Virus record (IMG/VR): IMGVR_UViG_3300042516_005475 | Location: 124,001 to 188,000 of that record | Reading direction: 5' to 3' (one strand) | DNA: 64,000 nt | Shown here: one piece after another, positions 32,430-54,958 of the stretch | Layout: every line of letters starts with the position of its first letter | How positions within the stretch are numbered: position 1 is the first letter of the stretch | The notes under the pieces: generated by a model | Told to the model about the DNA's origin: nothing | Database searches by the model: none | The model's input: the letters and a program-made list of their open reading frames with translations, nothing else | Program-made: the position numbers and the translations under genes

Positions 32430-32431
32430 CT

Positions 32432-32592: not shown

Positions 32593-32728
32593 TAACTTTA
32601 AAGTAGGTATCAACGTGCTGTGTTGGTATTAAAAAGCTAACCTACTTTTTTGAGGTTCACACAGTATTACATAGCCGCGATCGAGGCCATAATGATGTAT
32701 TAACTGATTGGCTCAGACGACCTCATAT

Positions 32729-32886: not shown

Positions 32887-32920
32887 AATTTTTAACATAC
32901 AGATGAAGGCGACAAGCTAG

Positions 32921-32992
32921 TATATGTAGAGCGGTTCTCCACCCTAACATTTACCCGGGCGGGTGATCTCGGTTCGACTCCAAGAACATATA
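32921..32992 (+). ncRNA. tRNA-like cloverleaf with 16-nt anticodon loop, no CCA
   Basis: TATATGT/ACATATA acceptor, GAG/CTC mini D arm, CACCC/GGGTG stem, T arm CTCGG-TTCGACT-CCAAG. Confidence 0.5.
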
Positions 32993-33109
32993 TTATGCAA
33001 CGAAGTAGTAACTGTATGGGACACTGATAGACGACTGTATTTAAAGTGTAACCGGAACAATTAGAATACAGTTGGAACGTTTCGTGAAGTCCAGTAAACA
33101 CTTTTCAAC

Positions 33110-33185: not shown

Positions 33186-33315
33186 ATTTTTTGTTTAGTG
33201 TCAGCAGGCTCATGATGCTGAAGAAAGACGCAAATAGCGCAACTTGCGGTCGTGGAGAATGAGTAGGTCTTAACACCTTGTATGGTACCTTTAAACCAAC
33301 ATTAAACATATTTTC

Positions 33316-36387: not shown

Positions 36388-37113
36388 ATGTACAAGATAA
36401 ACGTAATCTACAGAACGTGCAGCCAACCGAACAGGGACGTAAAGAGACCTGAATGGATGGACAATAACGGCTTCAGGCCGCATTGGTTTAACAAAGAAAA
36501 GTGCTATAACTCTATCCACAATGGGTTGGACACTTATGATAGTATTCATGTACTATTTGATGGAAATAAAAAAGATGTCCCTAAGTACATTATTCCAGAA
36601 ACTGTAGAGAATCTAGAATTCTTTCATGGAGGTAGTGATGCTCATAGCTACAACTATGTTCTTGATTATATTAAGAACAATTTTAGTGAACGAGATCTTA
36701 TCTACATTGTAGAAGACGATTATTTGCATTTGCCAACCTGGTCTAAAGCCCTCAGAGAAGGAGCTGAACTCGATTATACTGAGTATTGGACTCTTTACGA
36801 TCACCCAGACAAGTACTTTAGGGAATGTAAGCCGTGTAAGTTGTATGTAACTTATAACTACCATTGGCGTACTGCTGAATCTACAACTAACACTGTAGCT
36901 TTTAAATATCAGACCTTAATGAAGCATTGGGACATTCACAAGAAGTTCTGTGACCTTGATGCTGGTATGACCTGGGATCATGCAAAGTTCTTGGAACTAA
37001 AGGACAAGTATAATGCAGATGTCTCCTACCCTATTCAAGGATACTCAACTCATTGTGATAGTAGAGCTCTAGCTCCTAATATAGATTGGGAACATTTTAA
37101 TAAAAAGGTATGA
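36388..37113 (+). CDS. GT-A fold glycosyltransferase-like protein
   Basis: IYIVEDDYLH DxD-type motif; start moved to ATG 36388. Confidence 0.7.
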   Translation: MYKINVIYRTCSQPNRDVKRPEWMDNNGFRPHWFNKEKCYNSIHNGLDTYDSIHVLFDGNKKDVPKYIIPETVENLEFFHGGSDAHSYNYVLDYIKNNFSERDLIYIVEDDYLHLPTWSKALREGAELDYTEYWTLYDHPDKYFRECKPCKLYVTYNYHWRTAESTTNTVAFKYQTLMKHWDIHKKFCDLDAGMTWDHAKFLELKDKYNADVSYPIQGYSTHCDSRALAPNIDWEHFNKKV

Positions 37114-37490
37114 GCAAATTATTTGTACATCCTAATCTTTATGTTTCTCTTTCCCCTATTCACGGTTATGGAGTATTCACTGATAGTTTTATACCTGCTA
37201 ATACTATCATTGAAGAGTGTCATTTCATTGATGTTTGTAATGTTAATGAAGACAGTAAAACTTGTATCCGGTATCGTTTTTGCTATCCGATGCAAAACCC
37301 TGTGAAGATGGTGTTGCCATTAGGCATGGGTTGCATCTATAATCATAGCAACGAGGCCAATGCTTCTTGGAGTATTAACTTTGAGAAGAATGTATTTGTC
37401 TTTAAAACAATCAAAAATATATTTGCAAATCAAGAGATTTGTACTTATTATGGTGATGGGGAGTATTGGAAAAATACTAACGGGATATAA
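37110..37490 (+). CDS. SET-domain protein (lysine methyltransferase fold)
   Basis: SPIHGYGVFT, GCIYNHS, KNIFANQEICTYYG. Confidence 0.88.
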   Translation: MSKLFVHPNLYVSLSPIHGYGVFTDSFIPANTIIEECHFIDVCNVNEDSKTCIRYRFCYPMQNPVKMVLPLGMGCIYNHSNEANASWSINFEKNVFVFKTIKNIFANQEICTYYGDGEYWKNTNGI

Positions 37491-39913: not shown

Positions 39914-40132
39914 TTATCCGCAATGGCCACACTTGCTATCTTCTATAGCGGTTACTTTCTTGTTATCTACTAATCCATATAATTCAGTATATAGATTGTT
40001 AACTAGCTTATCTATCTTTTTAATAGTTTTAGGTATATATGTATTATCCTCTTTAGCCATTAAGTTGTTTAACTGTTCTGTAAAGAAGAAGACCTTATCT
40101 TGAATATTATTATTTAACTCCTGCTTGTTCAT
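39914..40132 (-). CDS. Small hypothetical protein
   Basis: ORF track. Confidence 0.45.
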   Translation of the reverse strand: MNKQELNNNIQDKVFFFTEQLNNLMAKEDNTYIPKTIKKIDKLVNNLYTELYGLVDNKKVTAIEDSKCGHCG

Positions 40133-40580
40133 ATGTAACCTTTACCTCCTTTCTATCAATTAAAATCTTACGATTCTTTTTGTGTTCATCAGCAACATTA
40201 AGCTTATTTTCTCCAAGGTACTTTACTGCATAATTATTAGAGATAAGCTCTTCATTAAGTACTTTGCGAGTCTTAGGATTAACAATTTCACCTAAAAGTC
40301 TGCCAAACTTCTCTCTACCATTTCCGTCTACATCGTCTGAAAGATGAGTTCTAATTATGACTGTGTCTTCACAATCTTTAACGAATTTTTTGACGTAATC
40401 TTTACTAGCTAAACCGAAGATTTTCTCAATTTTATCAGAGGTTCTGCTCTCAGGAGTATCTATCCCGAGCAATCTAACCTTCTGATTAGTTAATTTAATG
40501 TCGAAACCTAAATCGATATCAATGACAATTGTGTCACCGTCGACTACCTCTACTACCTTCGCATGATATTCAAATGGCAT
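40110..40580 (-). CDS. Thermonuclease (staphylococcal nuclease-like)
   Basis: VVDGDTI, VRLLGIDTPE, EKFGRLLG. Confidence 0.92.
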   Translation of the reverse strand: MPFEYHAKVVEVVDGDTIVIDIDLGFDIKLTNQKVRLLGIDTPESRTSDKIEKIFGLASKDYVKKFVKDCEDTVIIRTHLSDDVDGNGREKFGRLLGEIVNPKTRKVLNEELISNNYAVKYLGENKLNVADEHKKNRKILIDRKEVKVTYEQAGVK

Positions 40581-42502: not shown

Positions 42503-43177
42503 ATGAAAAACAAAGTCGAGTTGCTTGGATTTTACGGAAATGACCAGGTGCATGCCTGTTCTGCCTGGACATCAACTAGTCGAAACTTATCAGATGAAAA
42601 AATTGAAAGAATTCCTAAATTGCTCAAGATGCTTGCTGACGCAGGTCACCATACTCCTTTTGAAAAGTCTACTCTACACTTTTTGGTGGATACTGATATT
42701 GCTAGTCACATTCATCTCCTTAAGCATCGTATCGGTGTATCTATTAATGGAGAGTCTGCTCGGTACAAGGAAATAAAGGAAGACAAGTATCTTATTCCAG
42801 AAGATTGGAAAGATATTGAATCTAATTTTGTAGATGGAGATAGTAATAAGTTAGGTGTTCAAAATGATAAATGGGCAAAAATTCTTGAACATTATACTGA
42901 ACTTGGCAATACTCTTTATCATCAATGCGTTAAAGACCTTGAGCCAACTTTAGGGCGCAAGCGAGCTAAGGAATCTGCTCGATTCTTCAAAACTTACAAC
43001 TCTCAGATTCAGGCTGATATTTCCTTTAATTGGCGAAGCTTTTATCACTTCCTTCAGCTTCGCAACAAGCCTGATGCACAGCTAGAGATTCGAGAAATTG
43101 CTGCAGAGATGTTGAATCAAGTTAAGAACATTGACGGCAATCCGTTCGAACATACCATTGCTGCATTTGAACTGTAA
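42503..43177 (+). CDS. thyX: FAD-dependent thymidylate synthase
   Basis: GHHTPFE, HLLKHRIGVSINGESARY, NWRSFYHFLQLR...AQLEIR. Confidence 0.93.
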   Translation: MKNKVELLGFYGNDQVHACSAWTSTSRNLSDEKIERIPKLLKMLADAGHHTPFEKSTLHFLVDTDIASHIHLLKHRIGVSINGESARYKEIKEDKYLIPEDWKDIESNFVDGDSNKLGVQNDKWAKILEHYTELGNTLYHQCVKDLEPTLGRKRAKESARFFKTYNSQIQADISFNWRSFYHFLQLRNKPDAQLEIREIAAEMLNQVKNIDGNPFEHTIAAFEL

Positions 43178-43938: not shown

Positions 43939-46035
43939 GTGAAGTTTCAAGATTATCTCATTGAGTCCTGGAAAGATTATAAAGTAAGTAACAGCCCCAA
44001 AGTACTTTTGTACGACTTTTACTTGCTTAGTTATCTTTCCTCTCTTATTTTAGATCCAGGTACCAGAAAAGATGTTGGTTTAACAGGTGTTGGTTATTCT
44101 GGTAAATTCTTTGGAAGAGAAGGTAAAGAGCTCGATGAAGATATTCAAAACGCACAGAGAAAGCTATTACCATTCTTAGGTAACAAGCTATCTCAGGCTT
44201 TATTTTTAGCCGTTTGCGCAGAGCTACGCCATGTATTAGATAGAAATCAACAATGGAGTGAGTTTAAGCATACAAAGAACAAAACATTTAGAAACTATAT
44301 AAGAAACTTAGAGTTCATGAATAATAAAGAACTCAAAGATTTCCAATCTAAAAGAAACATAGAAAATCCAAGATTACAGGTTCAAAGCCAAGGTTATAAA
44401 ACATCTTACCAGGCTGCAAAGAAGTCTATCAAAGAAACAGGTGGCAATGTAATTGACTTTGCCAGAATGGCTGCAGACGCCTTTGAAGATTTAAACTGGT
44501 CAGCATCATACGGAGGAGATAAGTGGGCTGAAATTGCTAAAGGTTATGTAGATTTGCGCCTGGCTCTCAACAATTATAATCCTGAGGCTCCCAGCCCTTC
44601 TTCTGAGTCAGCAGAAAGGTTAATTGCTGCTATTGATCATGCATTTGATTTAGAGCACAATACTGGTACAGTATTAAACAAAGTAAAGTACTTTGATGTT
44701 AAGGGATATGATTGGATTAAGACTGCCTTGGATGATAAGAGAGATGCTAACATGTATGACATAGCCAAGAAGGCTAGTAGCGACATGAGAAAGCTAGGTC
44801 AAGAAGTGTTAAAGGTGGCTGGTATGCAGGATAAGCAGATGAAAAAAGTACCTGCAGAGGCTGGTATTCCAACAAAGAAAATAAAGCTGGCTGGGTTTAC
44901 CTCGAAGAAATATGAAGGTGAACATATTAAAGATCTCAGCAGTCTTCCTATAGGTAGTCTCATAACAGATGATTATAGCGAGTATGTAGCTAAAGTTTTA
45001 AATATAAAAAATGCAGAGAAAAAGGTTACGGTTAAATTTATAGCTATAAAAAATAAAAATGATGAAAAATGGTTAGGAAAAACTCATAGATATAGTTTTA
45101 ACTATATTAAAGAAAAATTACACATAGTTAAAAAACAAGATGAGGCTAATCTCTTAAAAGATTACTTTGTAGATCCTAGTTATAAACCGGAAGTTACTAG
45201 CACTTCATCTGCCATAAAAATTGGTGACACAGTAAAAGTTAAGAATAATAACATGGAGGGTACTGTAGAATTAATTAATAATGAGGGAGATAATGAAGCA
45301 CCCTTAGTTCAAATTAAAGTAATTAAAGCTATTCACCCTGAGCTTGTAGGTATTAAAACCTGGTACCCAGCAGACCATCTTGAGAAGATATCTCCATCAA
45401 AGGTAGTTAAGCTACAAGGTTTTGGTAGTAAAAAGCCAGCAAAAAATGAGGCATTATTATTTTCAACAGAAATTGAAAGCCCATATATGTTAACTATAGG
45501 TTCAATTCTAATTAATATCCATAGTTCTGATCTATATATTGTTCAAATGGTTAATGGGCCTGGAAATTATATAAAGATAAAATTAGTTGCATCGAACGAC
45601 GCTTTGGAGTTTCCTAATTATACTGAACCTGAATTATACAATGGTGCTACAATTGCGAGAGATTTTAGATTAATAAAAAACAAAGATAAGGAAAGAGCCT
45701 TTGCTTCATATGAGTTTATAAAATTATCTTCTGCGAGTAGAGAAGCATCTAAGGCTGCCAAGGCAGATGAGCCAGCCCCTAGAGAAAGAGATGAAAATTT
45801 AAAAGTTGGTTTTTACTTTGTAATTAATAATGAAACAAACATTGTTCAAATAACAGCTCTTCCAAGAGGTTATGTTGAATATAAAATAGTAGCAGCTACT
45901 AAAAAATATAAAGAGTTGGAAGGTGTTTCTAGCGGTATGCCTAAAGATATGTTCATAGATTCAATTGACTTTGCTATTAATCCTAAATCAACTGAATTTA
46001 ATTACTATATTAGACAATTCAAAAATAAACGTTGA
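43939..46035 (+). CDS. Large putative head-packaged protein; N-domain paralogous to 50814..54314
   Basis: MKFQDYLIE; LYDFYLLS, SYGGDKWAEIAKGY, AIDHAFDLEHNTG. Confidence 0.65.
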   Translation: MKFQDYLIESWKDYKVSNSPKVLLYDFYLLSYLSSLILDPGTRKDVGLTGVGYSGKFFGREGKELDEDIQNAQRKLLPFLGNKLSQALFLAVCAELRHVLDRNQQWSEFKHTKNKTFRNYIRNLEFMNNKELKDFQSKRNIENPRLQVQSQGYKTSYQAAKKSIKETGGNVIDFARMAADAFEDLNWSASYGGDKWAEIAKGYVDLRLALNNYNPEAPSPSSESAERLIAAIDHAFDLEHNTGTVLNKVKYFDVKGYDWIKTALDDKRDANMYDIAKKASSDMRKLGQEVLKVAGMQDKQMKKVPAEAGIPTKKIKLAGFTSKKYEGEHIKDLSSLPIGSLITDDYSEYVAKVLNIKNAEKKVTVKFIAIKNKNDEKWLGKTHRYSFNYIKEKLHIVKKQDEANLLKDYFVDPSYKPEVTSTSSAIKIGDTVKVKNNNMEGTVELINNEGDNEAPLVQIKVIKAIHPELVGIKTWYPADHLEKISPSKVVKLQGFGSKKPAKNEALLFSTEIESPYMLTIGSILINIHSSDLYIVQMVNGPGNYIKIKLVASNDALEFPNYTEPELYNGATIARDFRLIKNKDKERAFASYEFIKLSSASREASKAAKADEPAPRERDENLKVGFYFVINNETNIVQITALPRGYVEYKIVAATKKYKELEGVSSGMPKDMFIDSIDFAINPKSTEFNYYIRQFKNKR

Positions 46036-46065: not shown

Positions 46066-46458
46066 ATGAGCTATTATCTCTTTTTGGACGATGAACGCTT
46101 CCCTCAAGATGTCACTTGGGTGAAGCTCCCACCCCACAACTGGACCATTGTTCGCAACTATGCTGACTTTGTGCGAACCATTGAGAACAAAGGTTTGCCT
46201 GTGGAAATTGCCTTTGATCATGACTTGGGACACGAGCATTATCAGGCCTATCATGCCGCTGCTAAGCCTGGACATGGAGTCATTGATTACAGCAGCTTCA
46301 AGGAGAAGACTGGTCTCGACTGCGCCAAGTGGCTCATTGAACATTGTAACGAGAAGAATTTGCCGTTCCCCAAGTATTATGTTCACTCCATGAACCCCAT
46401 TGGCAAGCAGAATATCATCAACGCTGTCAATTCCTTCAAAAGATATTTGCAAAAGTAG
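46066..46458 (+). CDS. Cyclic-phosphate-processing receiver (cREC) domain protein
   Basis: LFLDDERFP, VRNY, IAFDHDLG, TGLDCAKWL, VHSMNPIG; TTGATT-16-TATAAT promoter at 46032..46059. Confidence 0.8.
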   Translation: MSYYLFLDDERFPQDVTWVKLPPHNWTIVRNYADFVRTIENKGLPVEIAFDHDLGHEHYQAYHAAAKPGHGVIDYSSFKEKTGLDCAKWLIEHCNEKNLPFPKYYVHSMNPIGKQNIINAVNSFKRYLQK

Positions 46459-46601
46459 TGGCGTTCCTTCAAAAAAGCAGCCATAATGATTGTAGAAAAT
46501 TTAGAACGGTAGTAACGTTCAACAGGTGCTGACAATACGTAGAAAAAGATAGTGTTGGCTAAGTGCGAGTTGTAGTGCCTCCAGCCTGTGTTCTTTTCAA
46601 T

Positions 46602-46920
46602 GCGATCGTAGCTCAACGGTAGAGCATCGGCCTTTAATAGGAGCGCTTATAGAGTGATCTATAAGATGAACCGAGCCATATGCGGGGACCTCCTTAGAGC
46701 CTTGAGTACCGTAAGGTAAAAATCTCAAGGATTGGACAATCCGCAGGAAACCAGTAGATTAGTACGCTGTTGGTCATAAATTGGGATCCTCAGAGACTTT
46801 ACGCTTGGCATCTCTAAAAGAGATGATGATAAAGTCCAGACTACAACGGAAACGGCTAGTGAAAACTAGAGTAGTAAGTTAAGCCGGGTGTTGTGGATTC
46901 GAATTCCACCGGTCGCACCA
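46602..46920 (+). tRNA. tRNA-Lys(TTT) interrupted by a group I intron (exons 46602..46634 and 46879..46920)
   Basis: Acceptor GCGATCG/CGGTCGC, A73, CCA; anticodon stem TCGGC/GCCGG; spliced loop CTT|TTAA; 75-nt mature tRNA. Confidence 0.88.
46635..46878 (+). ncRNA. Group I self-splicing intron, 244 nt, no internal ORF
   Basis: P1 CUU/GAG with U.G; P2 hairpin; P3 CCGAGC/GCTTGG; P TGCGGGGA; Q AATCCGCAGG; R TCAGAGACT; P7 GACTTT/AAAGTC; P8 CATCTCT/AGAGATG; P9; terminal G at 46878. Confidence 0.92.
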
Positions 46921-47020
46921 TATTTGCCAACAGGGCTCAGCTTGATGCTTTGGACAGATAACAAAGTCTGATAGAGAGGCTAGTGCAGAAAATCCTGTAT
47001 AAACTGCACATTAATTTTTC

Positions 47021-47098
47021 GGCAAGAGTCCTGATCAGACATGGTAAAGTGCCTGCAGAGGGCACGAGGCAGGTTCAAGTCCTCCATCTTGCCGTTCA
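47021..47098 (+). ncRNA. Degenerate tRNA-like element
   Basis: GGCAAGA/TCTTGCC acceptor, GTGCC-TGCAGAG-GGCAC arm, GGTTCAAGTCC T loop, no CCA. Confidence 0.5.
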
Positions 47099-47216
47099 AT
47101 TTAGTTCTTTTACATTTGAGTTGGAGCTGTATCCGCAAGGACAGCATGGTGTTAGTGAAAGCATTGGAAATGCAGTCTTTCACCGGACTACGACGGTTCC
47201 ATCCAACTCTTTAAAT

Positions 47217-47361
47217 TTATCTGTAGCTCAGCGGTAAGAGCAGAGTTCCTAACTATGGGTAAAGCCCTTAAAAATCTTATGTTAGGTCGTAAAATTGCCT
47301 TGTACTGATATTTTACAAGTTGTAAAAGTAGCCGTTGGTTCGATTCCAACCAGATGAACAA
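47217..47361 (+). ncRNA. tRNA-like RNA with a ~90-nt structured insert replacing the anticodon arm
   Basis: TTATCTG/CAGATGA acceptor, GCTC-AGCGGTAA-GAGC D arm, GTTGG-TTCGATT-CCAAC T arm, ends ACAA. Confidence 0.6.
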
Positions 47362-47454
47362 TTACGCCCGGAGAATACCCGATAAATAGGACACTTAATT
47401 TGGTTCCCCATCAGAGGATTAAAACGCCAATTAAAAGACCGGCGACAATTTTAT

Positions 47455-47586
47455 GCCAGGAGAGCGCGAGTAATACGCCTTCAGCTAGATGTAGTAATTA
47501 GCGTCTAGCAACGAGAAGAACAAAGGAAACCGAAGTAATTACCGGCTAACCTTTTATAGGTGGATAAAGAACCACCCCTGACACCA
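47455..47586 (+). ncRNA. CCA-terminated structured RNA of unknown class
   Basis: GCCAGG/CCTGAC-A-CCA closing stem, GGTGG/CCACC terminal arm, three internal elements carrying AGTAAT. Confidence 0.45.
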
Positions 47587-47590
47587 ATTT

Positions 47591-47725
47591 AACAAGACAG
47601 ATAGACGTGTAAGTAAGCTTTGGAAGCCACCCATAAGTGGGTGACTGGGTTCGATTCCCAGGAGCTTATTAGGGAACAAACTGCCATCTCGACGAGAGAG
47701 CGTAGGTGAAATCCTGAAACTTGTT
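47591..47725 (+). ncRNA. Structured RNA containing a D-armless tRNA-like domain (47614..47668)
   Basis: AACAAG/CTTGTT closing stem; TAAGCTT/GAGCTTA; CACCCA-TAAG-TGGGTG; CTGGG-TTCGATT-CCCAG. Confidence 0.5.
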
Positions 47726-47736
47726 TCAAATTTTAT

Positions 47737-47765
47737 TTGCAGTTCCTGTTACTTTCAGTTAAACT
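47737..47765 (+). promoter_or_regulatory. TTCCTG-box sigma70-like promoter
   Basis: TTGCAG-TTCCTG..17..TAAACT. Confidence 0.75.
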
Positions 47766-47786
47766 AAACGTAGTAAAAATAAAAAA

Positions 47787-48089
47787 ATGAACAAAGAAAT
47801 CGTTAACATCGTTCGGGACCGCAAGGGTAATCCTCGTGGTTATGTTGTCGCTACTAAGCTCGAGAATGGTAAGGTTGGCCTTGGCTGGTCTTATGTTAAT
47901 GTTAAGGCTGGAGATCGCTTCGACAAGTATCTCGGCCAAAAGATCGCCATGAATCGAGCCTTTACTGGTACTGATAAGTTTGTGCCTCGTGACGTGATGA
48001 AGGTGATTGATCGGGTGTCTTCTCGCGCTGTGAAGTACTTCAAGGCTCCTATTGATGCCTACCCTCAGCAAGTTGTTACTGTTGCGTAA
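47787..48089 (+). CDS. Early hypothetical protein
   Basis: ORF track; strong C/T-ending codon bias. Confidence 0.65.
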   Translation: MNKEIVNIVRDRKGNPRGYVVATKLENGKVGLGWSYVNVKAGDRFDKYLGQKIAMNRAFTGTDKFVPRDVMKVIDRVSSRAVKYFKAPIDAYPQQVVTVA

Positions 48090-48104
48090 ACAATTGCTAA
48101 TGTT

Positions 48105-48311
48105 ATGATTAAAATCCTTGTTGATCTCGATACTGAAGGTGACAGCTTCAGAGGTAATATGTCTGGAGAAGTCACCAAGATCTCTAGGGATATTGGTGAA
48201 ATGATCTTGGAAGTAATTAGCAAAGATGCTACTTGTGTATCGCGAGATATCATCGATGCTGGAGATAATAAAATTGGTGTAGTAACTATTACTAATCCTT
48301 GGAGGGAATAA
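48105..48311 (+). CDS. Small hypothetical protein
   Basis: ORF track. Confidence 0.55.
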   Translation: MIKILVDLDTEGDSFRGNMSGEVTKISRDIGEMILEVISKDATCVSRDIIDAGDNKIGVVTITNPWRE

Positions 48312-48333
48312 CTAAAAGGGCATAAATATCTTT

Positions 48334-49731
48334 ATGCCTGTTAACAGTAATGTAACAACTCCTAATTACCAAACTTTAGAGTATCAAAAGTTTGTCCAAA
48401 TATATAATGATACTAGATTCCCTCCAATAACAAGTGTAAGATCTGACTATTATAGCGGTACACAGATTGAGATATATGATAAGTATGCTGTATTAACTTT
48501 TGATATTGGGCAAAATGCAGCTCTAGGACCAGCTAATACGTTGCCGTTTGGAGATAATGCTGCTAGTGATGCCTTTGGTAGACTGAGAGTTTCTCTCCCA
48601 TCTACCTTATTTAACTCTAAACAAAATAATGATAGTAATTCTTTACTCTATAGCACAGCAACTGTAAATACAGGTAGTTGGTATTTTGATAACAATAATG
48701 CCTGTACAGTCTTATCTGTTTCAGCAACAGGAGATGTTGCTATAAAGCAGTCAAAAAAGTATATGAATTATCAGCCTGGCAAATCCCAGCTGATATTCGA
48801 AACCTTTGTAATGCCTAACACAGCAGGCATAGTTAACAGAGTTGGTTTATTTGATAGCTCAACAACTTCTCCATATAGCAATAATATTGAGGGTTATTAT
48901 TTTCAATGTAATAATGGAGTAAATTCTTTCCATATTGCTAATGTTGGTGACGAGCCAAGCCAAAGCGCTTTACAATCTGAATGGAACATAGACAAGCTTA
49001 ACGGTACAGGTTTATCTGGTATAACATTAGATGTTACAAAAACCCAGATTTTAGTAATAGATTACGAGTGGTTAGGGGTAGGGAGAGTTAGAATGGGGTT
49101 CTGTATTAATGGTATTATATTTTATTGTCATCAATTCGTTCATGCAAATGAAGTCTCTCTTCCTTATCTCCAAGATCCAAACAAACCTATTAGATATGAA
49201 ATTAGAAGCACAGGTGGAATAGGTTCATTAAAACAAATATGCGCTAGTGTTATGAGTGAAGGTGGAAGTGTTGATAACGCTATCCCGTTATCTATTGATA
49301 CTGGGTTTGACAGTATTGGTAATATTTCAAGCAATACATTATGGCCAGCTATAACTGTTAGACTAAAAGATTCTTTTAAGAGTGTAGATATACAATTAAA
49401 AGACTTTGCTGCAATGGCTTTCTCAACTACTAATACTCTTGTAAGAGTAGTATCAAATGGTGTTATTTCTAATTCAGCAGCCTTTGTTGATATGAGCTCT
49501 GGGGCCTTGGAATATAGTATAGGCACTACTTCTACTACTCTTACTGGAGGTGTTATATTATTCAGCTCTTTTTTTAATAAGGCCAGCAATACTATTAGTC
49601 AATTAGGAGAGTCTTTATATAGTTTAGGTAGCAACATAAACGGCACCAAAGATACATTATCATTAGTATTAGTTCCATGTGGAGGAAATGAAAAGTATTT
49701 TGCTGCAATGAACTTCAAACAGTACCTATAA
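48334..49731 (+). CDS. Probable virion structural beta-rich protein
   Basis: SDAFGRLRVS, YQPGKSQL, DYEWLGVGRVRMG; Ser/Thr/Asn-rich; ATAAATA 12 nt upstream. Confidence 0.6.
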   Translation: MPVNSNVTTPNYQTLEYQKFVQIYNDTRFPPITSVRSDYYSGTQIEIYDKYAVLTFDIGQNAALGPANTLPFGDNAASDAFGRLRVSLPSTLFNSKQNNDSNSLLYSTATVNTGSWYFDNNNACTVLSVSATGDVAIKQSKKYMNYQPGKSQLIFETFVMPNTAGIVNRVGLFDSSTTSPYSNNIEGYYFQCNNGVNSFHIANVGDEPSQSALQSEWNIDKLNGTGLSGITLDVTKTQILVIDYEWLGVGRVRMGFCINGIIFYCHQFVHANEVSLPYLQDPNKPIRYEIRSTGGIGSLKQICASVMSEGGSVDNAIPLSIDTGFDSIGNISSNTLWPAITVRLKDSFKSVDIQLKDFAAMAFSTTNTLVRVVSNGVISNSAAFVDMSSGALEYSIGTTSTTLTGGVILFSSFFNKASNTISQLGESLYSLGSNINGTKDTLSLVLVPCGGNEKYFAAMNFKQYL

Positions 49732-49736
49732 TTTAG

Positions 49737-49765
49737 TTGCCTTTCCTGTTCAGGTAAATTATACT
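49737..49765 (+). promoter_or_regulatory. TTCCTG-box sigma70-like promoter
   Basis: TTGCCT-TTCCTG..17..TATACT; ATG at 49777. Confidence 0.78.
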
Positions 49766-49776
49766 GTAGGAAGAAT

Positions 49777-50793
49777 ATGGAACGTAAACTTGCTAGTGTT
49801 CGTAAGATTCAAGAAATTAAGCTCATCGAAGGTGCTGACAAGATTTGCGCCTACCGAGTTGATGGTTGGTGGGTTGTAGATAGTATTAATAAGTATAATG
49901 TTGGTGATCTTGTGGTCTACTACGAGATTGATAGCTTTCTACCAATCACTCCTCAATTTGAGTTTCTCCGCAAGTCTTCATTCAAGAAGATGGGTGAACG
50001 TGAAGGCTTTAGGCTCAAGACTATTAAGCTCAAGGGCCAGCTCAGCCAAGGTCTCTTGACTAAAATTCCAATTGGTCTCATTGTACCTCCTAAGGAAAAT
50101 GATGACATGACTGAGTTGCTCGGCATTATCAAGTATGAGCCTCCTATTCCTGCTGAGCTAGCTGGTGAGATCAAGGGTTCGTTCCCTAGCTTCATCCCTA
50201 AGACTGATGAGGTTCGTATTCAGAACTTTGAAAGGGAAGTTGGGGTTTCTATCGCTAATGAGCGAGTTTACGCTACTGAGAAGGTTGATGGTACTAGCTT
50301 TACTTGTTATGTTAACAATGGTGAGTTTGGTGTTTGTGGTCGCAATTGGGAGTTGAAGGAGACTCAAGGTAACTCTCTTTGGCGAATGGCTAACAAGCTC
50401 AATCTTCGTGAGAAGCTCTTGAGTCTCAATCTTAACATTGCCTTGCAGGGTGAGTTGTTTGGTAGTGGAATTAATGGTAATTGGTACAAGCTCAATGATC
50501 ACCGACTCATGTTCTTTACTGGATATGATATTGATAATCAAAAGCGATTGCAGTTTAATGAGTTAATGAACTTGTTGGATAGTTTGCAGTTGGAAAGTGT
50601 TCCTGTTATTGATTATATTGCTACTATTCCAGATGGTACTATGGCTGAGATCGTTGAGTGGTCTTTGTTGTATGCTGAGTCTGAGAGTAATATTAATGCT
50701 GCTGTAGAGAACGAAGGTGTTGTTATTCGTGGTCTTGAGAAGGAGTTTAGCTTCAAGGCTATTAGTAACAAGTGGCTCCTTAGTGAAAAGTAA
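49777..50793 (+). CDS. RNA ligase (Rnl2-like, DRB0094-type with N-terminal tRNA-binding/OB domain)
   Basis: RKLASVRKI..IEGAD, YYEIDS, LKGQLSQG, PKTDEVRIQN, TEKVDGTS, QGELFG, EGVVIR, FKAISNKWLL. Confidence 0.9.
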   Translation: MERKLASVRKIQEIKLIEGADKICAYRVDGWWVVDSINKYNVGDLVVYYEIDSFLPITPQFEFLRKSSFKKMGEREGFRLKTIKLKGQLSQGLLTKIPIGLIVPPKENDDMTELLGIIKYEPPIPAELAGEIKGSFPSFIPKTDEVRIQNFEREVGVSIANERVYATEKVDGTSFTCYVNNGEFGVCGRNWELKETQGNSLWRMANKLNLREKLLSLNLNIALQGELFGSGINGNWYKLNDHRLMFFTGYDIDNQKRLQFNELMNLLDSLQLESVPVIDYIATIPDGTMAEIVEWSLLYAESESNINAAVENEGVVIRGLEKEFSFKAISNKWLLSEK

Positions 50794-50813: not shown

Positions 50814-53800
50814 GTGATGACACTGAGCAATTTCTTAACCGAGGCAGCAGTAAATTACAAGATTGGTAGTGGTAACCCAGAGAAGATGCTCTATGACTTT
50901 TATGTCTTGAGCTTCATCTCTACCATTAACTTAACACCTGAGAAGGCCAAGACTGGAACCTTTGGAGATCTTGGATTCCAGGGTGGGTTTCTCGGTAAAT
51001 CTGATAGAGTCAAGGAGGACATTGAGTACGCTCAAGATGTCCTCCTTCCTGTGTTAAAAGAGAAGCTAGTAAAAGGTTTGTTTGTATCTATCTGTGCTGA
51101 AATCAGACACATAAAAGATAGACCACAAAGCTATAAAGACACACCATTAGCAACATCCAAGGTATTCAGAGACTACTATCGCAATTATACTTTAATAGAT
51201 AAAAGTTTACCAAAAGAGTTTGAGATAAAGAGATTAAGAGAGCCTAAAAGCGCTATTCCAAAGTCTGAAGCTTACAAGAGATCCTATCAGGCGGCAACAA
51301 AGGCTATTAAAGACACAAATTCTACTCCATATGAGTTTGTTCAGATGTGTGAATATGCCTTTAAGAACATGTCATGGGCTGCTAGTTACGGTGGTAAGAA
51401 CTGGGCTGCTATTTGCGCTGGGTACAGATTGTTAGTAGATTCTAAGTCAAAGGATCAGGTATCTGTAGCTATTGACCATGCATATGACCTTGAGCATAAC
51501 ACAGGTGCGGCTCTTAACAAGGTAAAGGATTTCTACATTACTGATAAAAATGGTAGAGAAGACTTTGATTGGATGGGCAAAGCATTGGATCTCAAGCGCG
51601 ACGCTAAGTCCATGAACAAGCTCATTGACAAGTGTAGCGGTGATATGAAGAGATTAGCCTTGCAGGCTATGGCCTTATCTCCAATTGACTACATGAAGAA
51701 GAAGACTCCAGCTCCAGAGACTGTGATGCAGCAAACAGCATCTAAAGTAGGTGGAGAGTACTTAAATGCCTTTAATGAAGGAGCACCTAAGAAGTATAGA
51801 ACAAAAGAAACTAAAAAGGAAGAGAAGGCTGATTTAAGTGAAGTAAAGGTAGTTCCAGGCCCTAAGCATGGATTAACAGCAGTAACCAAATATCAAGAAG
51901 ATAATGTTTATTATGATGAGTATTTAAAAACCTATGTGTATGTTGTTAAGAAAGTGCCAGAAACAAAATCTGGAATAATTGTAAAATTAGCTGCTATAAC
52001 AAAAGAAACCCCTAAAGAGATTTTAAAGAAGCAAATTGATCTACACAACAAAGGAAATAATACTTATGTTAGTATCGACATGAACTTATTAAATTTAAGT
52101 CCAACAGATTTAGCTAACTTTTTTAATGAGGAAATACCAGTAACATCAAACGTAACAAAATTTAAATTAGCTCCTGCGCCTAAAGACTCTTCACATGCTC
52201 CTTACATTTTTCAAAAAAACAAATATTATTATGATAGTTTTTTAAATGTTTATGTAGAGTTTATTAAACCAGACCCTGATTCTAAACTTGGAATAATTGT
52301 TTCTTTAGTAGCAGTTACTCCAAATTCTGCTATTTCTCTACTTCAAAATAAAATTAAGGCCTATAATAAAGAACATGCTTATTTGAATACCTATGTCGCT
52401 GCGGAAAACGACCTTATGGGAGTTAGCCCAAAGGATGAAGAATCCTTAAAAGCTGCTGTATCTGGTAAGACTCCAATTAAATCACCAGAAGATCAATACG
52501 AAAGAGAGGAAAAGCAGTCAAAAGAGTATATTAGCAAGCTAGTACCTAATGCTCCTATGCCTATCACTGGTAGTAAGGTTAATAAGTTTAGTGATGATAA
52601 AATTTATTATGACAGCAAGACAAAGGCTTATGTAAAATATAAACATAAGAGTGGCTGGACAGATCCTAAAATAATGGAATTGTATGCAACAACATATTTT
52701 TCGGATACAGCTTTATTAAAAAGAAAAATTGAACTGTTTAAAAAGGAATTTGGTCAAAATAAACAATATGTAGCTGCAATAAAAGATATTATTGAGATTG
52801 ATGAATCTGATACAAACAAAGTAAAACAAGTAGTAGATGGAGAGAAGTCTGAGGTTAAGAAGCCTAATTTAGATGTATATTTCGCAAAGTATAAATTTGG
52901 TGATAAGGTCTTTTTAGATGTTAAAAAATCTGTATCTGGTCAAGTAATAGAGAACTTTTTTGAAGATAATGATGAGTATTACAAAATTAAAGTAATTGAT
53001 AATGCATCATATACTGGCGCTAGTTCTCCTTATGGAATAGGTAAAATCTTTACAAAAACTGCAAAGTATATAGATGACTTAAACCCAAAATACAAAGTAA
53101 CTGACAGAGTAATTTTAATACAATCCGGTAGTGAAGGTATTATTGTTCAGACCCCATTCAAGCAAGACGCTACATCTAATTATCTTATTAAGATTACAAA
53201 AGCAGGAGAGTCAAATGCCTTTAAAAAAGGAGAAGAAATTGTAGTTAATACCAGCCGTATCGCCCCTTTGAAGAGGGAGAATGCTAGCGCAAGAACTAAT
53301 GCTATTAAGAAGCAGAGTGCTCCAGGTAATATACCGTCAGAGGCCTGGGATAAAATGAGCGAAAAAGTAAAGAACATCTTTGCTCCATATAAGAAAAACA
53401 AAAACACTTCTTATGTTTATTATACTGAGAAAGGAGGCAGACAATTAGGTTTGTATGGTGTAATTGAAAAATTTTACTACAGTCAGGTTGGCGGTACAGA
53501 ATTACTTACAGTAGAATTTAGATATTTTGTTTCTGCTGCATCTCAAGCTTCTTTTACAACAATATCTGAGAATAATTTTAATAAACTACAAGATTACAAA
53601 TCTGCTTTAGAAAGTGTAAATGATTCACCTCTTTACAATGCTCCTTCTCAAAACTTAGATTCTGCATTAATGCTAAAAGACTATCAAACTGATATTAATG
53701 GAGAGGTATTTTATCATATACCAGCTCAGCAATATGTAAAGGTTAAGTCAAAAGGGGCTGGAATTCATACAGGTATATACTTTTCAGTTGTTCCAGTAGC

Positions 53801-54314
53801 AAAGACTAAATTCACCCCAGCTTATTATACATTTAACTGGGCAGAAATAACAGCAACAACTAAAGATTTGCAAGAATTATCTATCAAGGCAATAGAATAT
53901 TTGAAAAAACACTCTGGTGATATTGTTAAAGAGTTAATGCCAAAAGAAAACCCAGATGAAGTTAAAACACCTGGAAAAGTAAAGCCTGTTGAGATGAATG
54001 CATATGAAAAGGAAATACCTGTTCATTATATAAAGAATGAAGACTTCTTAGAATTAATTGATGCTCAGGCACTATCTTCTCAGTCTGAAATCAGAAGAGA
54101 TCAATTTTATTATGATGTTACAACAAAGTTAGTAGTAAGTCCAATAACTTCTAAAAAGCAATTTGGTGATGCTAGTAAGACTTTAGATGTAGCACCATAT
54201 GAAAAGATTTTAATTAACTATTCAGGAGAGAAAACACCTAGAGGAGAGAAAATTATAGTACCTAAAACAATGTCTGTGTATGTGACTGATTTGCATAAAA
54301 TCCTAGATTATTAG
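50814..54314 (+). CDS. Very large putative head-packaged protein; conserved N-domain plus repeated C-terminal modules
   Basis: MTLSNFLTE; LYDFYVLS, SYGGKNWAAICAGY, AIDHAYDLEHNTG; repeated YYD...YV modules. Confidence 0.65.
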   Translation: MMTLSNFLTEAAVNYKIGSGNPEKMLYDFYVLSFISTINLTPEKAKTGTFGDLGFQGGFLGKSDRVKEDIEYAQDVLLPVLKEKLVKGLFVSICAEIRHIKDRPQSYKDTPLATSKVFRDYYRNYTLIDKSLPKEFEIKRLREPKSAIPKSEAYKRSYQAATKAIKDTNSTPYEFVQMCEYAFKNMSWAASYGGKNWAAICAGYRLLVDSKSKDQVSVAIDHAYDLEHNTGAALNKVKDFYITDKNGREDFDWMGKALDLKRDAKSMNKLIDKCSGDMKRLALQAMALSPIDYMKKKTPAPETVMQQTASKVGGEYLNAFNEGAPKKYRTKETKKEEKADLSEVKVVPGPKHGLTAVTKYQEDNVYYDEYLKTYVYVVKKVPETKSGIIVKLAAITKETPKEILKKQIDLHNKGNNTYVSIDMNLLNLSPTDLANFFNEEIPVTSNVTKFKLAPAPKDSSHAPYIFQKNKYYYDSFLNVYVEFIKPDPDSKLGIIVSLVAVTPNSAISLLQNKIKAYNKEHAYLNTYVAAENDLMGVSPKDEESLKAAVSGKTPIKSPEDQYEREEKQSKEYISKLVPNAPMPITGSKVNKFSDDKIYYDSKTKAYVKYKHKSGWTDPKIMELYATTYFSDTALLKRKIELFKKEFGQNKQYVAAIKDIIEIDESDTNKVKQVVDGEKSEVKKPNLDVYFAKYKFGDKVFLDVKKSVSGQVIENFFEDNDEYYKIKVIDNASYTGASSPYGIGKIFTKTAKYIDDLNPKYKVTDRVILIQSGSEGIIVQTPFKQDATSNYLIKITKAGESNAFKKGEEIVVNTSRIAPLKRENASARTNAIKKQSAPGNIPSEAWDKMSEKVKNIFAPYKKNKNTSYVYYTEKGGRQLGLYGVIEKFYYSQVGGTELLTVEFRYFVSAASQASFTTISENNFNKLQDYKSALESVNDSPLYNAPSQNLDSALMLKDYQTDINGEVFYHIPAQQYVKVKSKGAGIHTGIYFSVVPVAKTKFTPAYYTFNWAEITATTKDLQELSIKAIEYLKKHSGDIVKELMPKENPDEVKTPGKVKPVEMNAYEKEIPVHYIKNEDFLELIDAQALSSQSEIRRDQFYYDVTTKLVVSPITSKKQFGDASKTLDVAPYEKILINYSGEKTPRGEKIIVPKTMSVYVTDLHKILDY

Positions 54315-54696: not shown

Positions 54697-54929
54697 TAAC
54701 CTCGTTAAAGGATATGAGAATACCATTGGTATGCTTAGGATTCAAAACGAGCAATTGCGAATAGATTTAGACGAACTACGTAAAGAAAATCTATTGTTGA
54801 GAGTAGAATTGTCTGAAATAACTAAAAAGAGAAAGAAGAAGGTTTTGAGCTTCCATTGAAGAATGCCTTGTTTCTTGACACATCTTGGTACGGAATAGAT
54901 TTGTGTGCCAAAAGAATTCTGAATTTCTC

Positions 54930-54958
54930 TGGACTTTCCTCTGCAGGTCCTTCATAAT
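54930..54958 (+). promoter_or_regulatory. TTCCT-box sigma70-like promoter
   Basis: TGGACT-TTCCT..17..CATAAT; ATG at 54966. Confidence 0.7.

What the first reader, a model, noticed from the sequence alone, without database searches (positions are those of the whole stretch)
46066..50793. Candidate tRNA-protection/RNA-repair island: cREC, intron-split tRNA-Lys, tRNA-mimic array and RNA ligase
Seen: within about 4.7 kb on one strand lie a cyclic-phosphate-processing receiver protein (46066), the intron-containing tRNA-Lys, about 800 bp of tRNA-like RNAs and an Rnl2/DRB0094-type RNA ligase (49777). Two calcineurin-like phosphoesterases lie elsewhere, one directly after the main tRNA array (33606). 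Known: T4 Pnk/Rnl1 heal and seal PrrC-cut tRNA-Lys, and cREC domains were predicted as 2',3'-cyclic-phosphate end-healers in RNA-repair neighbourhoods. Inference: a layered counter-defence against host anticodon nucleases, combining repair, a hidden substrate and decoys.
Basis: partly seen in the sequence, partly recalled or inferred. Interest (0 to 1): 0.8.

Follow-up and report, generated by a model that had tools for sequence, protein, structure and literature searches.

The report
Phage RNA-repair genes bracketing tRNA-like RNAs
A lake-water jumbo phage has a predicted RNA-end-healing enzyme and an RNA ligase on either side of its tRNA-Lys gene (split here by a recently acquired self-splicing intron) and a cassette of conserved tRNA-shaped and other structured RNAs; the enzyme pairing was already predicted in the literature, while the intron in a phage tRNA and the RNA cassette look new.

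Summary
These are cREC (46066-46458), tRNA-Lys(UUU) split by a 244-nt group I intron (46635-46878), three tRNA-shaped RNAs plus other conserved structured RNAs (46921-47786), and an RNA ligase (49777-50793). The ligase is Rnl5/NgrRnl-type, not Rnl2.

The gene order cREC - RNAs - two small ORFs - ligase holds in about a dozen related metagenomic phage loci. A second lineage has a ligase - P-loop kinase - cREC operon about 4 kb from the same RNA family. This supports a heal-and-seal RNA-repair module, a pairing already predicted by Iyer, Burroughs and Aravind.

Three parts of the "layered defence" reading fail:
- The intron is absent from 9 relatives, and one of these is identical in both exons. 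It behaves as a selfish insertion, not a shield.
- The tRNA-like RNAs lack a Lys-type anticodon loop and an encoded CCA, so they are poor anticodon-nuclease decoys.
- The kinase that lies downstream of the ligase in every relative whose sequence reaches that far (five) is reduced to a 31-aa remnant here.

A virion structural gene also interrupts the "island". The RNA modules are the best-conserved part of the locus and show covariation. Their function is unknown.

The parts
46066..46458 (+). cREC (cyclic-phosphate-processing receiver) protein, 130 aa
   Evidence: Pfam PF20274 E 2.8e-23. phrog_1479. Invariant FLDDER and FDHD. 81-92% nt identity in relatives.
46459..46601 (+). E0: conserved structured leader upstream of tRNA-Lys
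   Evidence: 77-94% identical in 8 relatives. Hairpins change on both strands together in the alignment as read by eye; this was not formally counted.
46602..46634 (+). tRNA-Lys(UUU) 5' exon, ending at wobble U34
   Evidence: ARAGORN -i. Identical to the intronless L011 746-778.
46635..46878 (+). Group I intron, 244 nt, no ORF, inserted between anticodon nucleotides 34 and 35
   Evidence: Rfam RF00028 70.9 bits. U precedes the 5' splice site and G ends the intron. Absent from 9 relatives.
46879..46920 (+). tRNA-Lys(UUU) 3' exon with encoded CCA
46921..47019 (+). E2: spacer element. Other relatives carry a second tRNA at this position: Lys-CUU in L005, L021, L024 and L029, and Thr-AGU in L019 and L030.
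   Evidence: 100% identical to L011 821-919. Alternative tRNAs at this position.
47020..47094 (+). E3: tRNA-shaped RNA. It has an acceptor stem, an anticodon-like stem and a T arm. Its 7-nt loop varies and lacks U33, and no CCA is encoded.
   Evidence: Alignments and compensatory changes. T-loop motif at 47073. No CCA.
47118..47209 (+). E4: structured RNA closed by a 7-bp stem (GAGTTGG/CCAACTC). It is present, absent or relocated among relatives.
   Evidence: An E4-like copy occurs in L039 and lineage B.
47217..47358 (+). E5: tRNA-like RNA with canonical acceptor, D and T arms. An ~86-nt two-hairpin domain replaces the anticodon arm, and no CCA is encoded.
   Evidence: Rfam tRNA 36.4 bits. 96.9% of cells paired against 31-46% in slid controls. 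7 pairs changed on both sides against 2.0+-1.1 in shuffles, 0 of 500 reaching the observed value. ARAGORN assigns a different anticodon in each relative.
47359..47440 (+). E6a: conserved ends (CGCCCGG ... CCGGCG) around a variable middle
47455..47582 (+). E6b: ~130-nt multi-hairpin RNA with the invariant core GGAGAGNGCGAGTAATACGCC
   Evidence: 34 predicted pairs, 6 with compensatory changes. The core occurs in 9 further IMG/VR contigs.
47614..47668 (+). E7: tRNA-like RNA without a D arm (acceptor stem, one hairpin, T arm)
   Evidence: Weak mascRNA-like Rfam hit. T-loop at 47649. One compensatory change in L015. No CCA.
47671..47786 (+). E8: conserved 5' leader of the next gene
   Evidence: 94-100% identical in 7 relatives and 78% in L030.
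47787..48089 (+). p100: small conserved phage protein of unknown function
   Evidence: 76-96% aa identity in relatives. 560 remote homologues and no Pfam family. Confident model, pLDDT 93.8, with no significant PDB match; the best hint is Acb4 at TM about 0.4.
48105..48311 (+). p68: small conserved ORF of unknown function
   Evidence: Present in every relative that spans this position. No Pfam or PHROG hit.
48334..49731 (+). 465-aa virion structural protein. It is an indel within the locus and not part of any repair function.
   Evidence: phrog_1645 E 2.5e-79. More than 7000 homologues. Absent from L019/L020, L021/L022 and L027.
49777..50793 (+). Rnl5-type (NgrRnl/DraRnl) ATP-dependent RNA ligase, 338 aa
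   Evidence: PF21189 plus PF09414. 5COT E 1.8e-65 over the full length, with EKVDG aligned to the KLDG adenylylation motif.
54844..54936 (+). 31-aa remnant of the APS-kinase/KTI12-like P-loop kinase. The kinase is intact downstream of the ligase in relatives.
   Evidence: tblastn 71% over 31 aa. Intact in L005, L020, L021, L027 and L011.

Best explanation
This is a conserved accessory locus of a clade of freshwater jumbo phages.

Two RNA-end enzymes bracket a cassette of stable-RNA genes. One is cREC, predicted to open 2',3'-cyclic phosphates. The other is an Rnl5 ligase, which seals 3'-OH/5'-phosphate breaks.

The cassette starts with tRNA-Lys(UUU), the only tRNA-Lys in the window. It continues with at least six modular structured RNAs. 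Three of these are tRNA-shaped but cannot decode.

The most likely working is as follows:
- The proteins belong to the already predicted phage heal-and-seal RNA repair pathway: cyclic phosphodiesterase, 5' kinase, then ligase.
- In this genome the pathway has lost its linked kinase.
- The RNAs are co-expressed stable RNAs that are cut out like tRNAs, as with RNAC and RNAD of the T4 tRNA region.
- The group I intron is a recent selfish insertion that must splice out for tRNA-Lys to work. It is not a protective device.

Shown here: the identities of the genes and RNAs, the exon junction, conservation, covariation and synteny.

Inferred: all enzyme activities, transcription and processing of the RNAs, and any link between the RNAs and the enzymes.
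For: Identities.

Synteny: the order big protein - cREC - RNAs - p100 - p68 - (p465) - ligase - big protein holds in all related loci long enough to show it. The kinase lies downstream in 5 of them.

Independent lineage B (L035-L038): the same E6b RNA family plus a tRNA-like RNA, followed by an Rnl1-like ligase. An Rnl5 - AAA_33 kinase - cREC set with overlapping stops and starts lies about 4 kb away.

Conservation: the RNA modules are 95-100% identical in nucleotides in relatives whose flanking coding DNA is 68-93% identical.

Covariation.

Expression hint: short contigs from four RNA libraries cover E0 to E6.

Intron: it is sporadic, and L011 is 100% identical over both exons and E2.

Literature: the cREC-RNA ligase linkage was published as a prediction (PMC7824862, PMC9503650). 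T4 makes two small RNAs of unknown role from its tRNA region (PMC3014915).
Against: No kinase is present in the 64-kb window, so the pathway is incomplete here unless a kinase lies elsewhere in the 230-kb genome.

From my own knowledge of DraRnl and NgrRnl, Rnl5 enzymes prefer nicks in duplex RNA. A broken anticodon loop is not their obvious substrate.

cREC has never been assayed and is also predicted to act on ADP-ribose-derived cyclic phosphates.

All close relatives belong to one clade, so their synteny may be simple descent.

In GenBank phages, cREC and this ligase family have largely different host distributions. Three cREC neighbourhoods I inspected had no RNA ligase within 6 kb, and in LR756501 the two genes are 130 kb apart.

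Three other contigs with E6b (L032, L034, L039) have no cREC or Rnl5 in the DNA fetched around it, which ranges from about 1 to 9 kb per side.

The RNA-library contigs may be contaminating DNA, and they come from relatives.
Confidence: 0.5

Rival explanations
1. One reading: a layered counter-defence against anticodon nucleases. cREC and the ligase repair cut tRNA-Lys, the intron hides the tRNA-Lys anticodon loop, and the tRNA-like RNAs act as decoy substrates.
For: tRNA-Lys is a classic target of anticodon nucleases (PrrC), and it heads the RNA cassette in every relative that spans that position. cREC, ligase and, in relatives, a kinase are linked. The tRNA-like RNAs are strongly conserved.
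Against: The intron is absent from 9 relatives. It is present as a different intron, one nucleotide away, in L026. The spliced tRNA has an ordinary CUUUUAA loop, so nothing stays hidden. E3, E5 and E7 have no UUU anticodon loop: the E3 loop varies (CAG, AAG, AAA, with a purine at position 33) and E5 has an 86-nt insert in its place. Lineage B has the RNAs and the enzymes but no tRNA-Lys nearby. The kinase is lost here.
Confidence: 0.1
2. The co-location is incidental. This is a hypervariable accessory region between two paralogous large genes, where tRNA genes, small RNAs, mobile introns, endonuclease genes and unrelated accessory genes pile up. cREC acts on nucleotide signals (cyclic ADP-ribose-type or 2',3'-cyclic nucleotides), not on RNA ends, and the ligase works independently.
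For: The locus is riddled with indels: p465, a KaiC-like ATPase plus a ~100-aa ORF, a 211-aa ORF and a 248-aa Cys-rich ORF. RNA modules are shuffled, lost or replaced between relatives. The cREC literature also predicts ADP-ribose derivatives as substrates, and fusions to Nudix. There is no consistent cREC-ligase adjacency in GenBank phages. p100 resembles a cyclic-nucleotide sponge only weakly.
Against: Lineage B has Rnl5 - kinase - cREC with overlapping reading frames, which is hard to explain without a shared RNA-end function. The same RNA family lies near these genes in two lineages that differ in gene order.
Confidence: 0.25
3. The structured RNAs are themselves the clients or cofactors of the enzymes. 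They could be cut and re-joined, circularised or matured by cREC and the ligase. Alternatively they could serve as a scaffold for repair, as tRNA-like Y RNAs do with Ro60 next to RtcB in bacteria.
For: The RNA family and the repair genes are linked in two lineages. The RNAs are the best-conserved part of the locus. Bacterial and phage tRNA-like Y RNAs are a precedent, and they are RNase P and CCA-adding substrates (PMC4201824).
Against: No Ro60/TROVE hit was found among the window ORFs scanned, which cover most ORFs of 100 aa or more. YrlA scores are far below threshold and fall on true tRNAs. An RNA-library contig carries E5 with its insert intact, so there is no sign of excision. Three E6b-bearing contigs lack the enzymes in the DNA fetched.
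Confidence: 0.12

Closest known systems
Predicted cREC-centred RNA-repair neighbourhoods of jumbo phages (Iyer, Anantharaman, Krishnan, Burroughs, Aravind 2021, PMC7824862; 2022, PMC9503650)
   Same: A stand-alone cREC is linked to an ATP-dependent RNA ligase. In relatives and in lineage B a P-loop kinase is linked too. Calcineurin-like phosphoesterases occur in the same genome.
   Different: Here the two genes are separated by a 1.3-kb cassette of tRNA-Lys and structured RNAs, and by a structural gene. There is no sirtuin, KptA, Nudix or 2H partner in the window. The kinase is degraded.
T4 Pnkp + Rnl1 repair of PrrC-cut tRNA-Lys
   Same: The logic is the same: open the cyclic phosphate, phosphorylate the 5' end, seal. 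tRNA-Lys is involved in both.
   Different: There is no Pnkp and no Rnl1 homologue in the window. The ligase is Rnl5, a duplex-nick sealer. T4 repairs the host's tRNA-Lys, whereas this phage encodes its own.
Naegleria gruberi / Deinococcus radiodurans Rnl5 ligases (5COT; DRB0094)
   Same: Full-length similarity, N-terminal OB plus nucleotidyltransferase architecture, and the KxDG motif.
   Different: The biological substrate is unknown in all of them. In the phage the ligase sits next to cREC and RNA genes.
Bacterial group I introns in tRNA anticodon loops (cyanobacterial tRNA-Leu(UAA), Azoarcus tRNA-Ile)
   Same: A small ORF-less group I intron in the anticodon loop. From my own knowledge, the cyanobacterial tRNA-Leu intron also lies between nucleotides 34 and 35.
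   Different: The host gene is a phage tRNA-Lys. A 2014 review states that all phage group I introns known then were in protein-coding genes (PMC3984707). A second, divergent intron occupies the neighbouring phosphodiester in relative L026.
T4 RNAC/RNAD, and bacterial or phage Y RNAs (YrlA) next to Ro60/RtcB
   Same: Small stable RNAs with tRNA-like features, encoded in tRNA regions or beside RNA-repair genes. Their role is unknown or accessory.
   Different: No sequence or Rfam match. No Ro60 was found among the ORFs scanned. The tRNA-like ends here are the true 5' and 3' ends, whereas in YrlA the tRNA-like module is internal.

Membership tests
cREC (PF20274) | Profile match above the curated cut-off | tested here: met
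   82.8 bits against a cut-off of 27, E 2.8e-23
cREC (PF20274) | Receiver-type acidic pocket (paired Asp after strand 1, Asp after strand 3) | tested here: met
   FLDDER and FDHD are invariant across 6 homologues at 43-85% identity. Mapping these residues to the pocket is inferred.
cREC (PF20274) | Hydrolysis of 2',3'-cyclic phosphate | not testable with these tools
   The papers that defined the domain describe it as uncharacterised.
Rnl5 RNA ligase (NgrRnl/DraRnl) | N-terminal OB domain followed by a nucleotidyltransferase domain, similar to NgrRnl over the full length | tested here: met
   PF21189 at residues 5-95 and PF09414 at 163-328. 5COT E 1.8e-65, residues 3-335.
Rnl5 RNA ligase (NgrRnl/DraRnl) | Lysine adenylylation motif KxDG | tested here: met
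   EKVDGTS aligns with VKLDGSS of 5COT.
Rnl5 RNA ligase (NgrRnl/DraRnl) | Sealing of 3'-OH/5'-phosphate RNA nicks | not testable with these tools
   Requires a biochemical assay.
Group I intron | Covariance-model match above the gathering score | tested here: met
   RF00028 70.9 bits against 50
Group I intron | U before the 5' splice site, terminal G, and precise exon junction | tested here: met
   ...GGCCTT|TAATAGG ... GTAGTAAG|TTAAGCC. The intronless L011 allele equals exon 1 plus exon 2 exactly.
Group I intron | Self-splicing | tested here: inconclusive
   The only joint found in RNA libraries (46634 to 46879) comes from an L011-like intronless relative, not from spliced RNA of this phage.
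Canonical decoding tRNA (for E3, E5, E7) | 5-bp anticodon stem, 7-nt loop with U33, and a fixed anticodon | tested here: not met
   The E3 loop varies and has G or A at position 33. E5 has an 86-nt insert, and ARAGORN names a different anticodon in each relative. E7 has no D arm.
Canonical decoding tRNA (for E3, E5, E7) | Encoded 3' CCA, as in this phage's own tRNAs | tested here: not met
   18 of 19 tRNAs and tRNA-Lys encode CCA. E3, E5 and E7 do not.
Canonical decoding tRNA (for E3, E5, E7) | Acceptor stem and T arm with the T-loop motif | tested here: met
T4-type heal-and-seal (Pnkp + Rnl1) | Polynucleotide 5' kinase | tested here: not met
   No GxxxxGK[ST] motif in any window ORF of 80 aa or more, and only a 31-aa remnant at 54844-54936. 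The kinase is intact in relatives and in lineage B.
T4-type heal-and-seal (Pnkp + Rnl1) | Rnl1-type ligase | tested here: not met
   The lineage B Rnl1-like protein has no hit in the window.
Ro60/Y-RNA with RtcB | Ro60 (TROVE) gene and a YrlA-type RNA | tested here: not met
   No TROVE hit in 57 window ORFs scanned. YrlA hits score 26-29 bits against a cut-off of 69 and lie over true tRNAs.

The most novel reading that the evidence does not exclude
The tRNA-shaped RNAs (E3, E5, E7) and the E4 and E6b structured RNAs form a new family of phage non-coding RNAs that work together with cREC, a kinase and RNA ligases. They could be scaffolds or guides for RNA repair. Alternatively they could be sponges for host enzymes or toxins that recognise the tRNA elbow or acceptor end. 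Either way this would be an RNA-protein counter-defence system with no described equivalent in phages.
Probability: 0.2. Interest if true: 0.8.

Novelty: new variant of a known kind. Interest (0 to 1): 0.5.

Why it matters
cREC is a widespread phage domain whose predicted chemistry has never been tested. The lineage B operon (ligase - kinase - cREC) and this locus provide compact, clonable sets for a direct test.

I found no earlier report of a self-splicing intron in a phage tRNA gene. Two different introns at adjacent positions of tRNA-Lys in sister phages give a natural before-and-after pair for studying intron gain.

The RNA cassette adds several covariation-supported RNA motifs that are absent from Rfam. 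One of them is shared by at least six further viral contigs. Their repeated position near RNA-repair genes makes it possible to test the old question of what phage tRNA-region small RNAs, such as T4 RNAC and RNAD, are for.

Tried and rejected
- Megablast of the 5-kb region against GenBank phages found nothing. Distant blastn found only a 70-nt intron-core match in Acinetobacter and Pseudomonas phages.
- IMG/VR scans with the p465, cREC and p100 proteins, and with the E5 and E3 DNA cores, returned only the source contig or marginal hits.
- I rejected ARAGORN's 'tRNA-Pyl(CUA) with 56-nt intron' call for E5, which would imply a suppressor tRNA. The same element is called Thr, Trp, Val or Gly in relatives. 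The short ORF inside the insert is not conserved.
- I rejected the 'skips 244' joint in RNA run X21 as proof of splicing. Its flanking letters match the intronless L011-type allele.
- I looked for sequence in the RNAs complementary to the tRNA-Lys anticodon stem-loop, which could act as a splint. By eye I found only an A-rich loop in E5, and it varies between relatives, so I did not pursue it.
- p100: no Pfam hit and no significant PDB or BFVD annotation. The Acb4 resemblance (TM about 0.4) is too weak to use.
- The N-terminal domain shared by the two flanking large proteins gave nothing in the protein atlas.
- The recurrent spacer motif TWKTTCTTTW is not specific to the RNA cassette.
- Promoter and terminator scans gave only consensus-level matches.

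Full report
**Source and setting**

The window is part of IMG/VR contig IMGVR_UViG_3300042516_005475, which is 230 kb long. About 18 lake-water metagenome runs hold 76-98% of the sampled words of a 1.4-kb stretch of it. No GenBank phage is close to it: megablast finds nothing. The window also carries a tmRNA and 21 tRNA genes found with default settings. It is therefore a tRNA-rich jumbo phage from fresh water.

**Check of the observation**

All the listed features are real.

- **cREC.** The 130-aa ORF at 46066-46458 matches Pfam cREC_REC (E 2.8e-23). It keeps FLDDER and FDHD, which are invariant in homologues down to 43% identity.
- **tRNA-Lys and intron.** Rfam finds a group I intron at 46624-46859 (70.9 bits, gathering score 50).
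- **Splice sites.** The junction reads ...GGCCTT|TAATAGG...GTAGTAAG|TTAAGCC. A U precedes the 5' site and a G ends the intron. Relative L011 has an intronless gene that equals exon 1 plus exon 2 letter for letter, which fixes the boundaries.
- **Ligase.** The ORF at 49777-50793 has the PHA02142 OB domain followed by the RNA_ligase domain. It aligns over its full length with Naegleria gruberi RNA ligase 5COT (E 1.8e-65), including the KxDG lysine motif. It is an Rnl5 enzyme, the family of DRB0094, not Rnl2.
- **Phosphoesterases.** Two calcineurin-like phosphoesterases exist at 33606-34352 and 10147-10761.
- **Correction.** Between the RNAs and the ligase lie two small ORFs (p100, p68) and a 465-aa virion structural protein (phrog_1645, E 2.5e-79).

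**The 1.3-kb non-coding gap (46459-47786)**

The gap is a cassette of separate RNA modules. In order they are:

- **E0 (46459-46601):** a conserved leader.
- **tRNA-Lys** with its intron.
- **E2 (46921-47019):** a spacer element.
- **E3 (47020-47094):** tRNA-shaped.
- **E4 (47118-47209):** a multi-hairpin RNA closed by a 7-bp stem.
- **E5 (47217-47358):** normal acceptor, D and T arms, with an ~86-nt two-hairpin domain in place of the anticodon arm.
- **E6a (47359-47440).**
- **E6b (47455-47582):** a multi-hairpin RNA with the invariant core GGAGAGNGCGAGTAATACGCC.
- **E7 (47614-47668):** tRNA-like without a D arm.
- **E8 (47671-47786):** the conserved leader of the next gene.

The T-loop motif GTTCRANTCC occurs 17 times in the window against 0.58 expected. 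Three of these copies lie in E3, E5 and E7.

These three RNAs are not decoding tRNAs:
- The 7-nt loop of E3 changes between relatives (CAG, AAG, AAA) and has a purine at position 33.
- ARAGORN gives E5 a different 'anticodon' in each relative: CUA, UGU, CCA, AAC, CCC.
- 18 of 19 canonical tRNAs and tRNA-Lys encode the 3' CCA, but none of E3, E5 and E7 does.

**Related loci**

Exact-protein look-ups and one metagenome scan gave about a dozen distinct related loci: L005, L011-L013, L015-L017 and L019-L030. Every locus long enough to show it has the same order:

- large protein
- cREC
- (optional inserts)
- RNA cassette
- p100
- p68
- (p465, present or absent)
- Rnl5 ligase
- large paralogous protein

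An APS-kinase/KTI12-like P-loop kinase follows downstream in L005, L011, L020, L021 and L027. In the window that kinase is reduced to a 31-aa remnant at 54844-54936. No window ORF of 80 aa or more has a Walker A motif.

The locus is mosaic:
- p465 is missing from L019/L020, L021/L022 and L027.
- A KaiC-like ATPase plus a ~100-aa ORF lies after cREC in L024 and L027, and a 211-aa ORF in L029.
- A 248-aa Cys-rich ORF splits the cassette in L015.
- RNA modules are present, absent or moved between relatives.

**The intron**

The window's intron is found in none of the relatives. Nine loci carry an intronless tRNA-Lys(UUU): L005, L011, L019, L021, L024, L027, L029, L030 and L022. L011 is 100% identical to the window over both exons and the 99-nt E2, so the gain or loss is very recent.

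L026 has a different intron in its tRNA-Lys(UUU), of about 390 nt. It has weak but specific group I core signals (23.5 bits, E 7e-4). If it ends in G, as group I introns do, it sits one phosphodiester upstream, between positions 33 and 34.

This pattern fits mobile, selfish introns that repeatedly target the anticodon loop. It does not fit a conserved 'hidden substrate'. Splicing would restore an ordinary CUUUUAA loop.

One RNA-library contig shows the joint 46634 to 46879. Its upstream letters match the intronless L011-type allele, so it does not show splicing.

A 2014 review states that all phage group I introns known then lay in protein-coding genes, despite the many phage tRNA genes (PMC3984707). 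My searches of later literature found no counter-example.

**Are the RNAs real?**

- **Conservation.** In relatives whose flanking coding DNA is 68-93% identical to the window, E3, E4, E5, E6b and E8 are 95-100% identical.
- **E5.** 96.9% of alignment cells form pairs, against 31-46% when partners are slid. Seven pairs changed on both sides, against 2.0+-1.1 in shuffles, with 0 of 500 shuffles reaching the observed value.
- **E3.** Compensatory changes occur in the acceptor and anticodon-like stems (L027, L011).
- **E6b.** 34 pairs are predicted, six with double changes.
- **E6b elsewhere.** Its core occurs in nine more IMG/VR contigs, including a divergent copy (L032) with further compensatory changes.
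- **Expression hint.** Short contigs (136-237 nt) from four metatranscriptome runs cover E0 through E6, and one carries E5 with its insert intact. This is only a hint. DNA carry-over cannot be excluded, and the contigs come from relatives.

**An independent lineage**

L035-L038 are one phage, which I call lineage B. Its cREC is 49% and its Rnl5 34% identical to the window's. In L037 the arrangement is as follows:

- A 500-nt non-coding cluster at 5920-6419. It holds an E4-like RNA, E6b, and a tRNA-like RNA with an 8-bp acceptor stem and a T arm.
- An Rnl1-like ligase (RNA_lig_T4_1, E 1.2e-15) directly after the cluster.
- About 2.5 kb further on, Rnl5 (10179-11198), an AAA_33/KTI12/Zeta-type P-loop kinase (11201-11656, E 4e-31) and cREC (11653-12033). 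The kinase stop overlaps the cREC start, and the kinase starts 3 nt after the Rnl5 stop.

This is the strongest evidence here that cREC works with a kinase and a ligase on RNA ends. It also shows that the RNA family tends to sit near such genes.

The link is not universal. L032, L034 and L039 carry E6b without cREC or Rnl5 in the DNA fetched around it, which ranges from about 1 to 9 kb per side. In GenBank phages the cREC family (160 records) and this ligase family (339 records) have largely different host distributions. Three inspected cREC neighbourhoods had no RNA ligase, and in LR756501 the two genes are 130 kb apart.

**Interpretation**

The cREC-ligase pairing is not new. Iyer and colleagues named the domain and reported operonic links to RNA ligases, kinases and calcineurin-like phosphoesterases in jumbo phages. 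They also note that it remains uncharacterised (PMC7824862, PMC9503650).

I therefore read the protein part as a member of that predicted heal-and-seal repair kind, here without its kinase.

From my own knowledge, Rnl5 enzymes seal nicks in duplex RNA, whereas T4 Rnl1 is the anticodon-loop specialist. The natural substrate of this ligase is therefore open. Lineage B carries both ligase types.

The RNAs are best compared with two precedents. One is T4 RNAC and RNAD, small RNAs from the tRNA region with unknown roles (PMC3014915). The other is the tRNA-like Y RNAs of bacteria and phages, which are RNase P and CCA-adding substrates (PMC4201824). From my own knowledge, in Salmonella these lie in the same operon as RtcB.

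No Ro60 gene was found among the 57 window ORFs scanned, and no Rfam family beyond tRNA reaches threshold in the RNA gap.

The decoy idea is weak for anticodon nucleases, because the RNAs lack a Lys-type loop. It stays open for host factors that recognise the tRNA elbow or acceptor end.

**Verdict**

- The repair pairing is a new member of an already predicted kind.
- The 'hidden substrate' layer is refuted as a conserved feature.
- The 'decoy' layer is unsupported in the form stated.
- Two things appear new: group I introns in a phage tRNA gene, and a covariation-supported family of tRNA-shaped and other structured RNAs that recurs near RNA-repair genes.

Noticed in passing
window 54844-54936; L005 15936-16394: An APS-kinase/KTI12-like P-loop kinase lies downstream of the ligase in five relatives. 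In the window it is reduced to a 31-aa C-terminal remnant.
   Followed up: yes
L026 185-650: A sister phage carries a different, ~390-nt group I-like intron in tRNA-Lys(UUU). It probably lies between positions 33 and 34. Its 3' end resembles that of the window's intron.
   Followed up: partly
L037 5920-12033 (also L035, L036, L038): A second phage lineage has an E4-like RNA, E6b and a tRNA-like RNA cluster, then an Rnl1-like ligase, then an Rnl5 - AAA_33 kinase - cREC operon in which the kinase stop overlaps the cREC start.
   Followed up: yes
L039 6866-9739: A 104.9-kb viral contig has a ~2.9-kb stretch with no ORF of 100 aa or more. It contains E4-like and E6b RNAs, which suggests a larger array of structured RNAs.
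   Followed up: no
window 32287-32431, 32593-32728, 32887-33109, 33186-33315: The gaps in the main tRNA array are 130-220 nt long. At least one holds an uncalled tRNA-like element, with a T-loop motif at 32972. tRNA-like RNAs are therefore not confined to the island.
   Followed up: partly
window 43939-46035 and 50814-54314: The two large proteins that flank the locus are paralogues. They share an N-terminal domain of ~300-320 aa (36-39% identity, phrog_20946) of unknown function, and their C-terminal parts are repetitive and variable.
   Followed up: partly
L015 229-975 (minus strand): A 248-aa Cys-rich ORF with no Pfam hit is inserted between E6b and E7 in a 93%-identical relative. It may be a free-standing homing endonuclease.
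   Followed up: partly
L024 1729-3032; L027 4370-5645; L019 4880-5185: A ~100-aa ORF and a KaiC/DnaB-like P-loop ATPase are inserted between cREC and the RNA cassette in some relatives.
   Followed up: partly
window 47787-48089: p100 is the most conserved protein of the locus. It gives a confident model (pLDDT 93.8) with no significant structural match. There is a faint resemblance (TM about 0.4) to the phage SPO1 Acb4 cyclic-nucleotide sponge.
   Followed up: partly
window 18843-19222: A phage-encoded tmRNA (113 bits) lies directly upstream of a five-tRNA array.
   Followed up: no
window 49777-50793 compared with relatives: The ligase gene has two strongly diverged alleles in the clade. It is 94% identical in nucleotides in L011-L013 but about 70% in most others, whereas neighbouring genes show the opposite pattern. 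This indicates recombination within the locus.
   Followed up: partly
window 28834-29724, 37110-37490, 40110-40580, 42503-43177: Other accessory genes in the window include a UvdE UV endonuclease, a SET-domain protein, a staphylococcal-nuclease homologue and ThyX.
   Followed up: no
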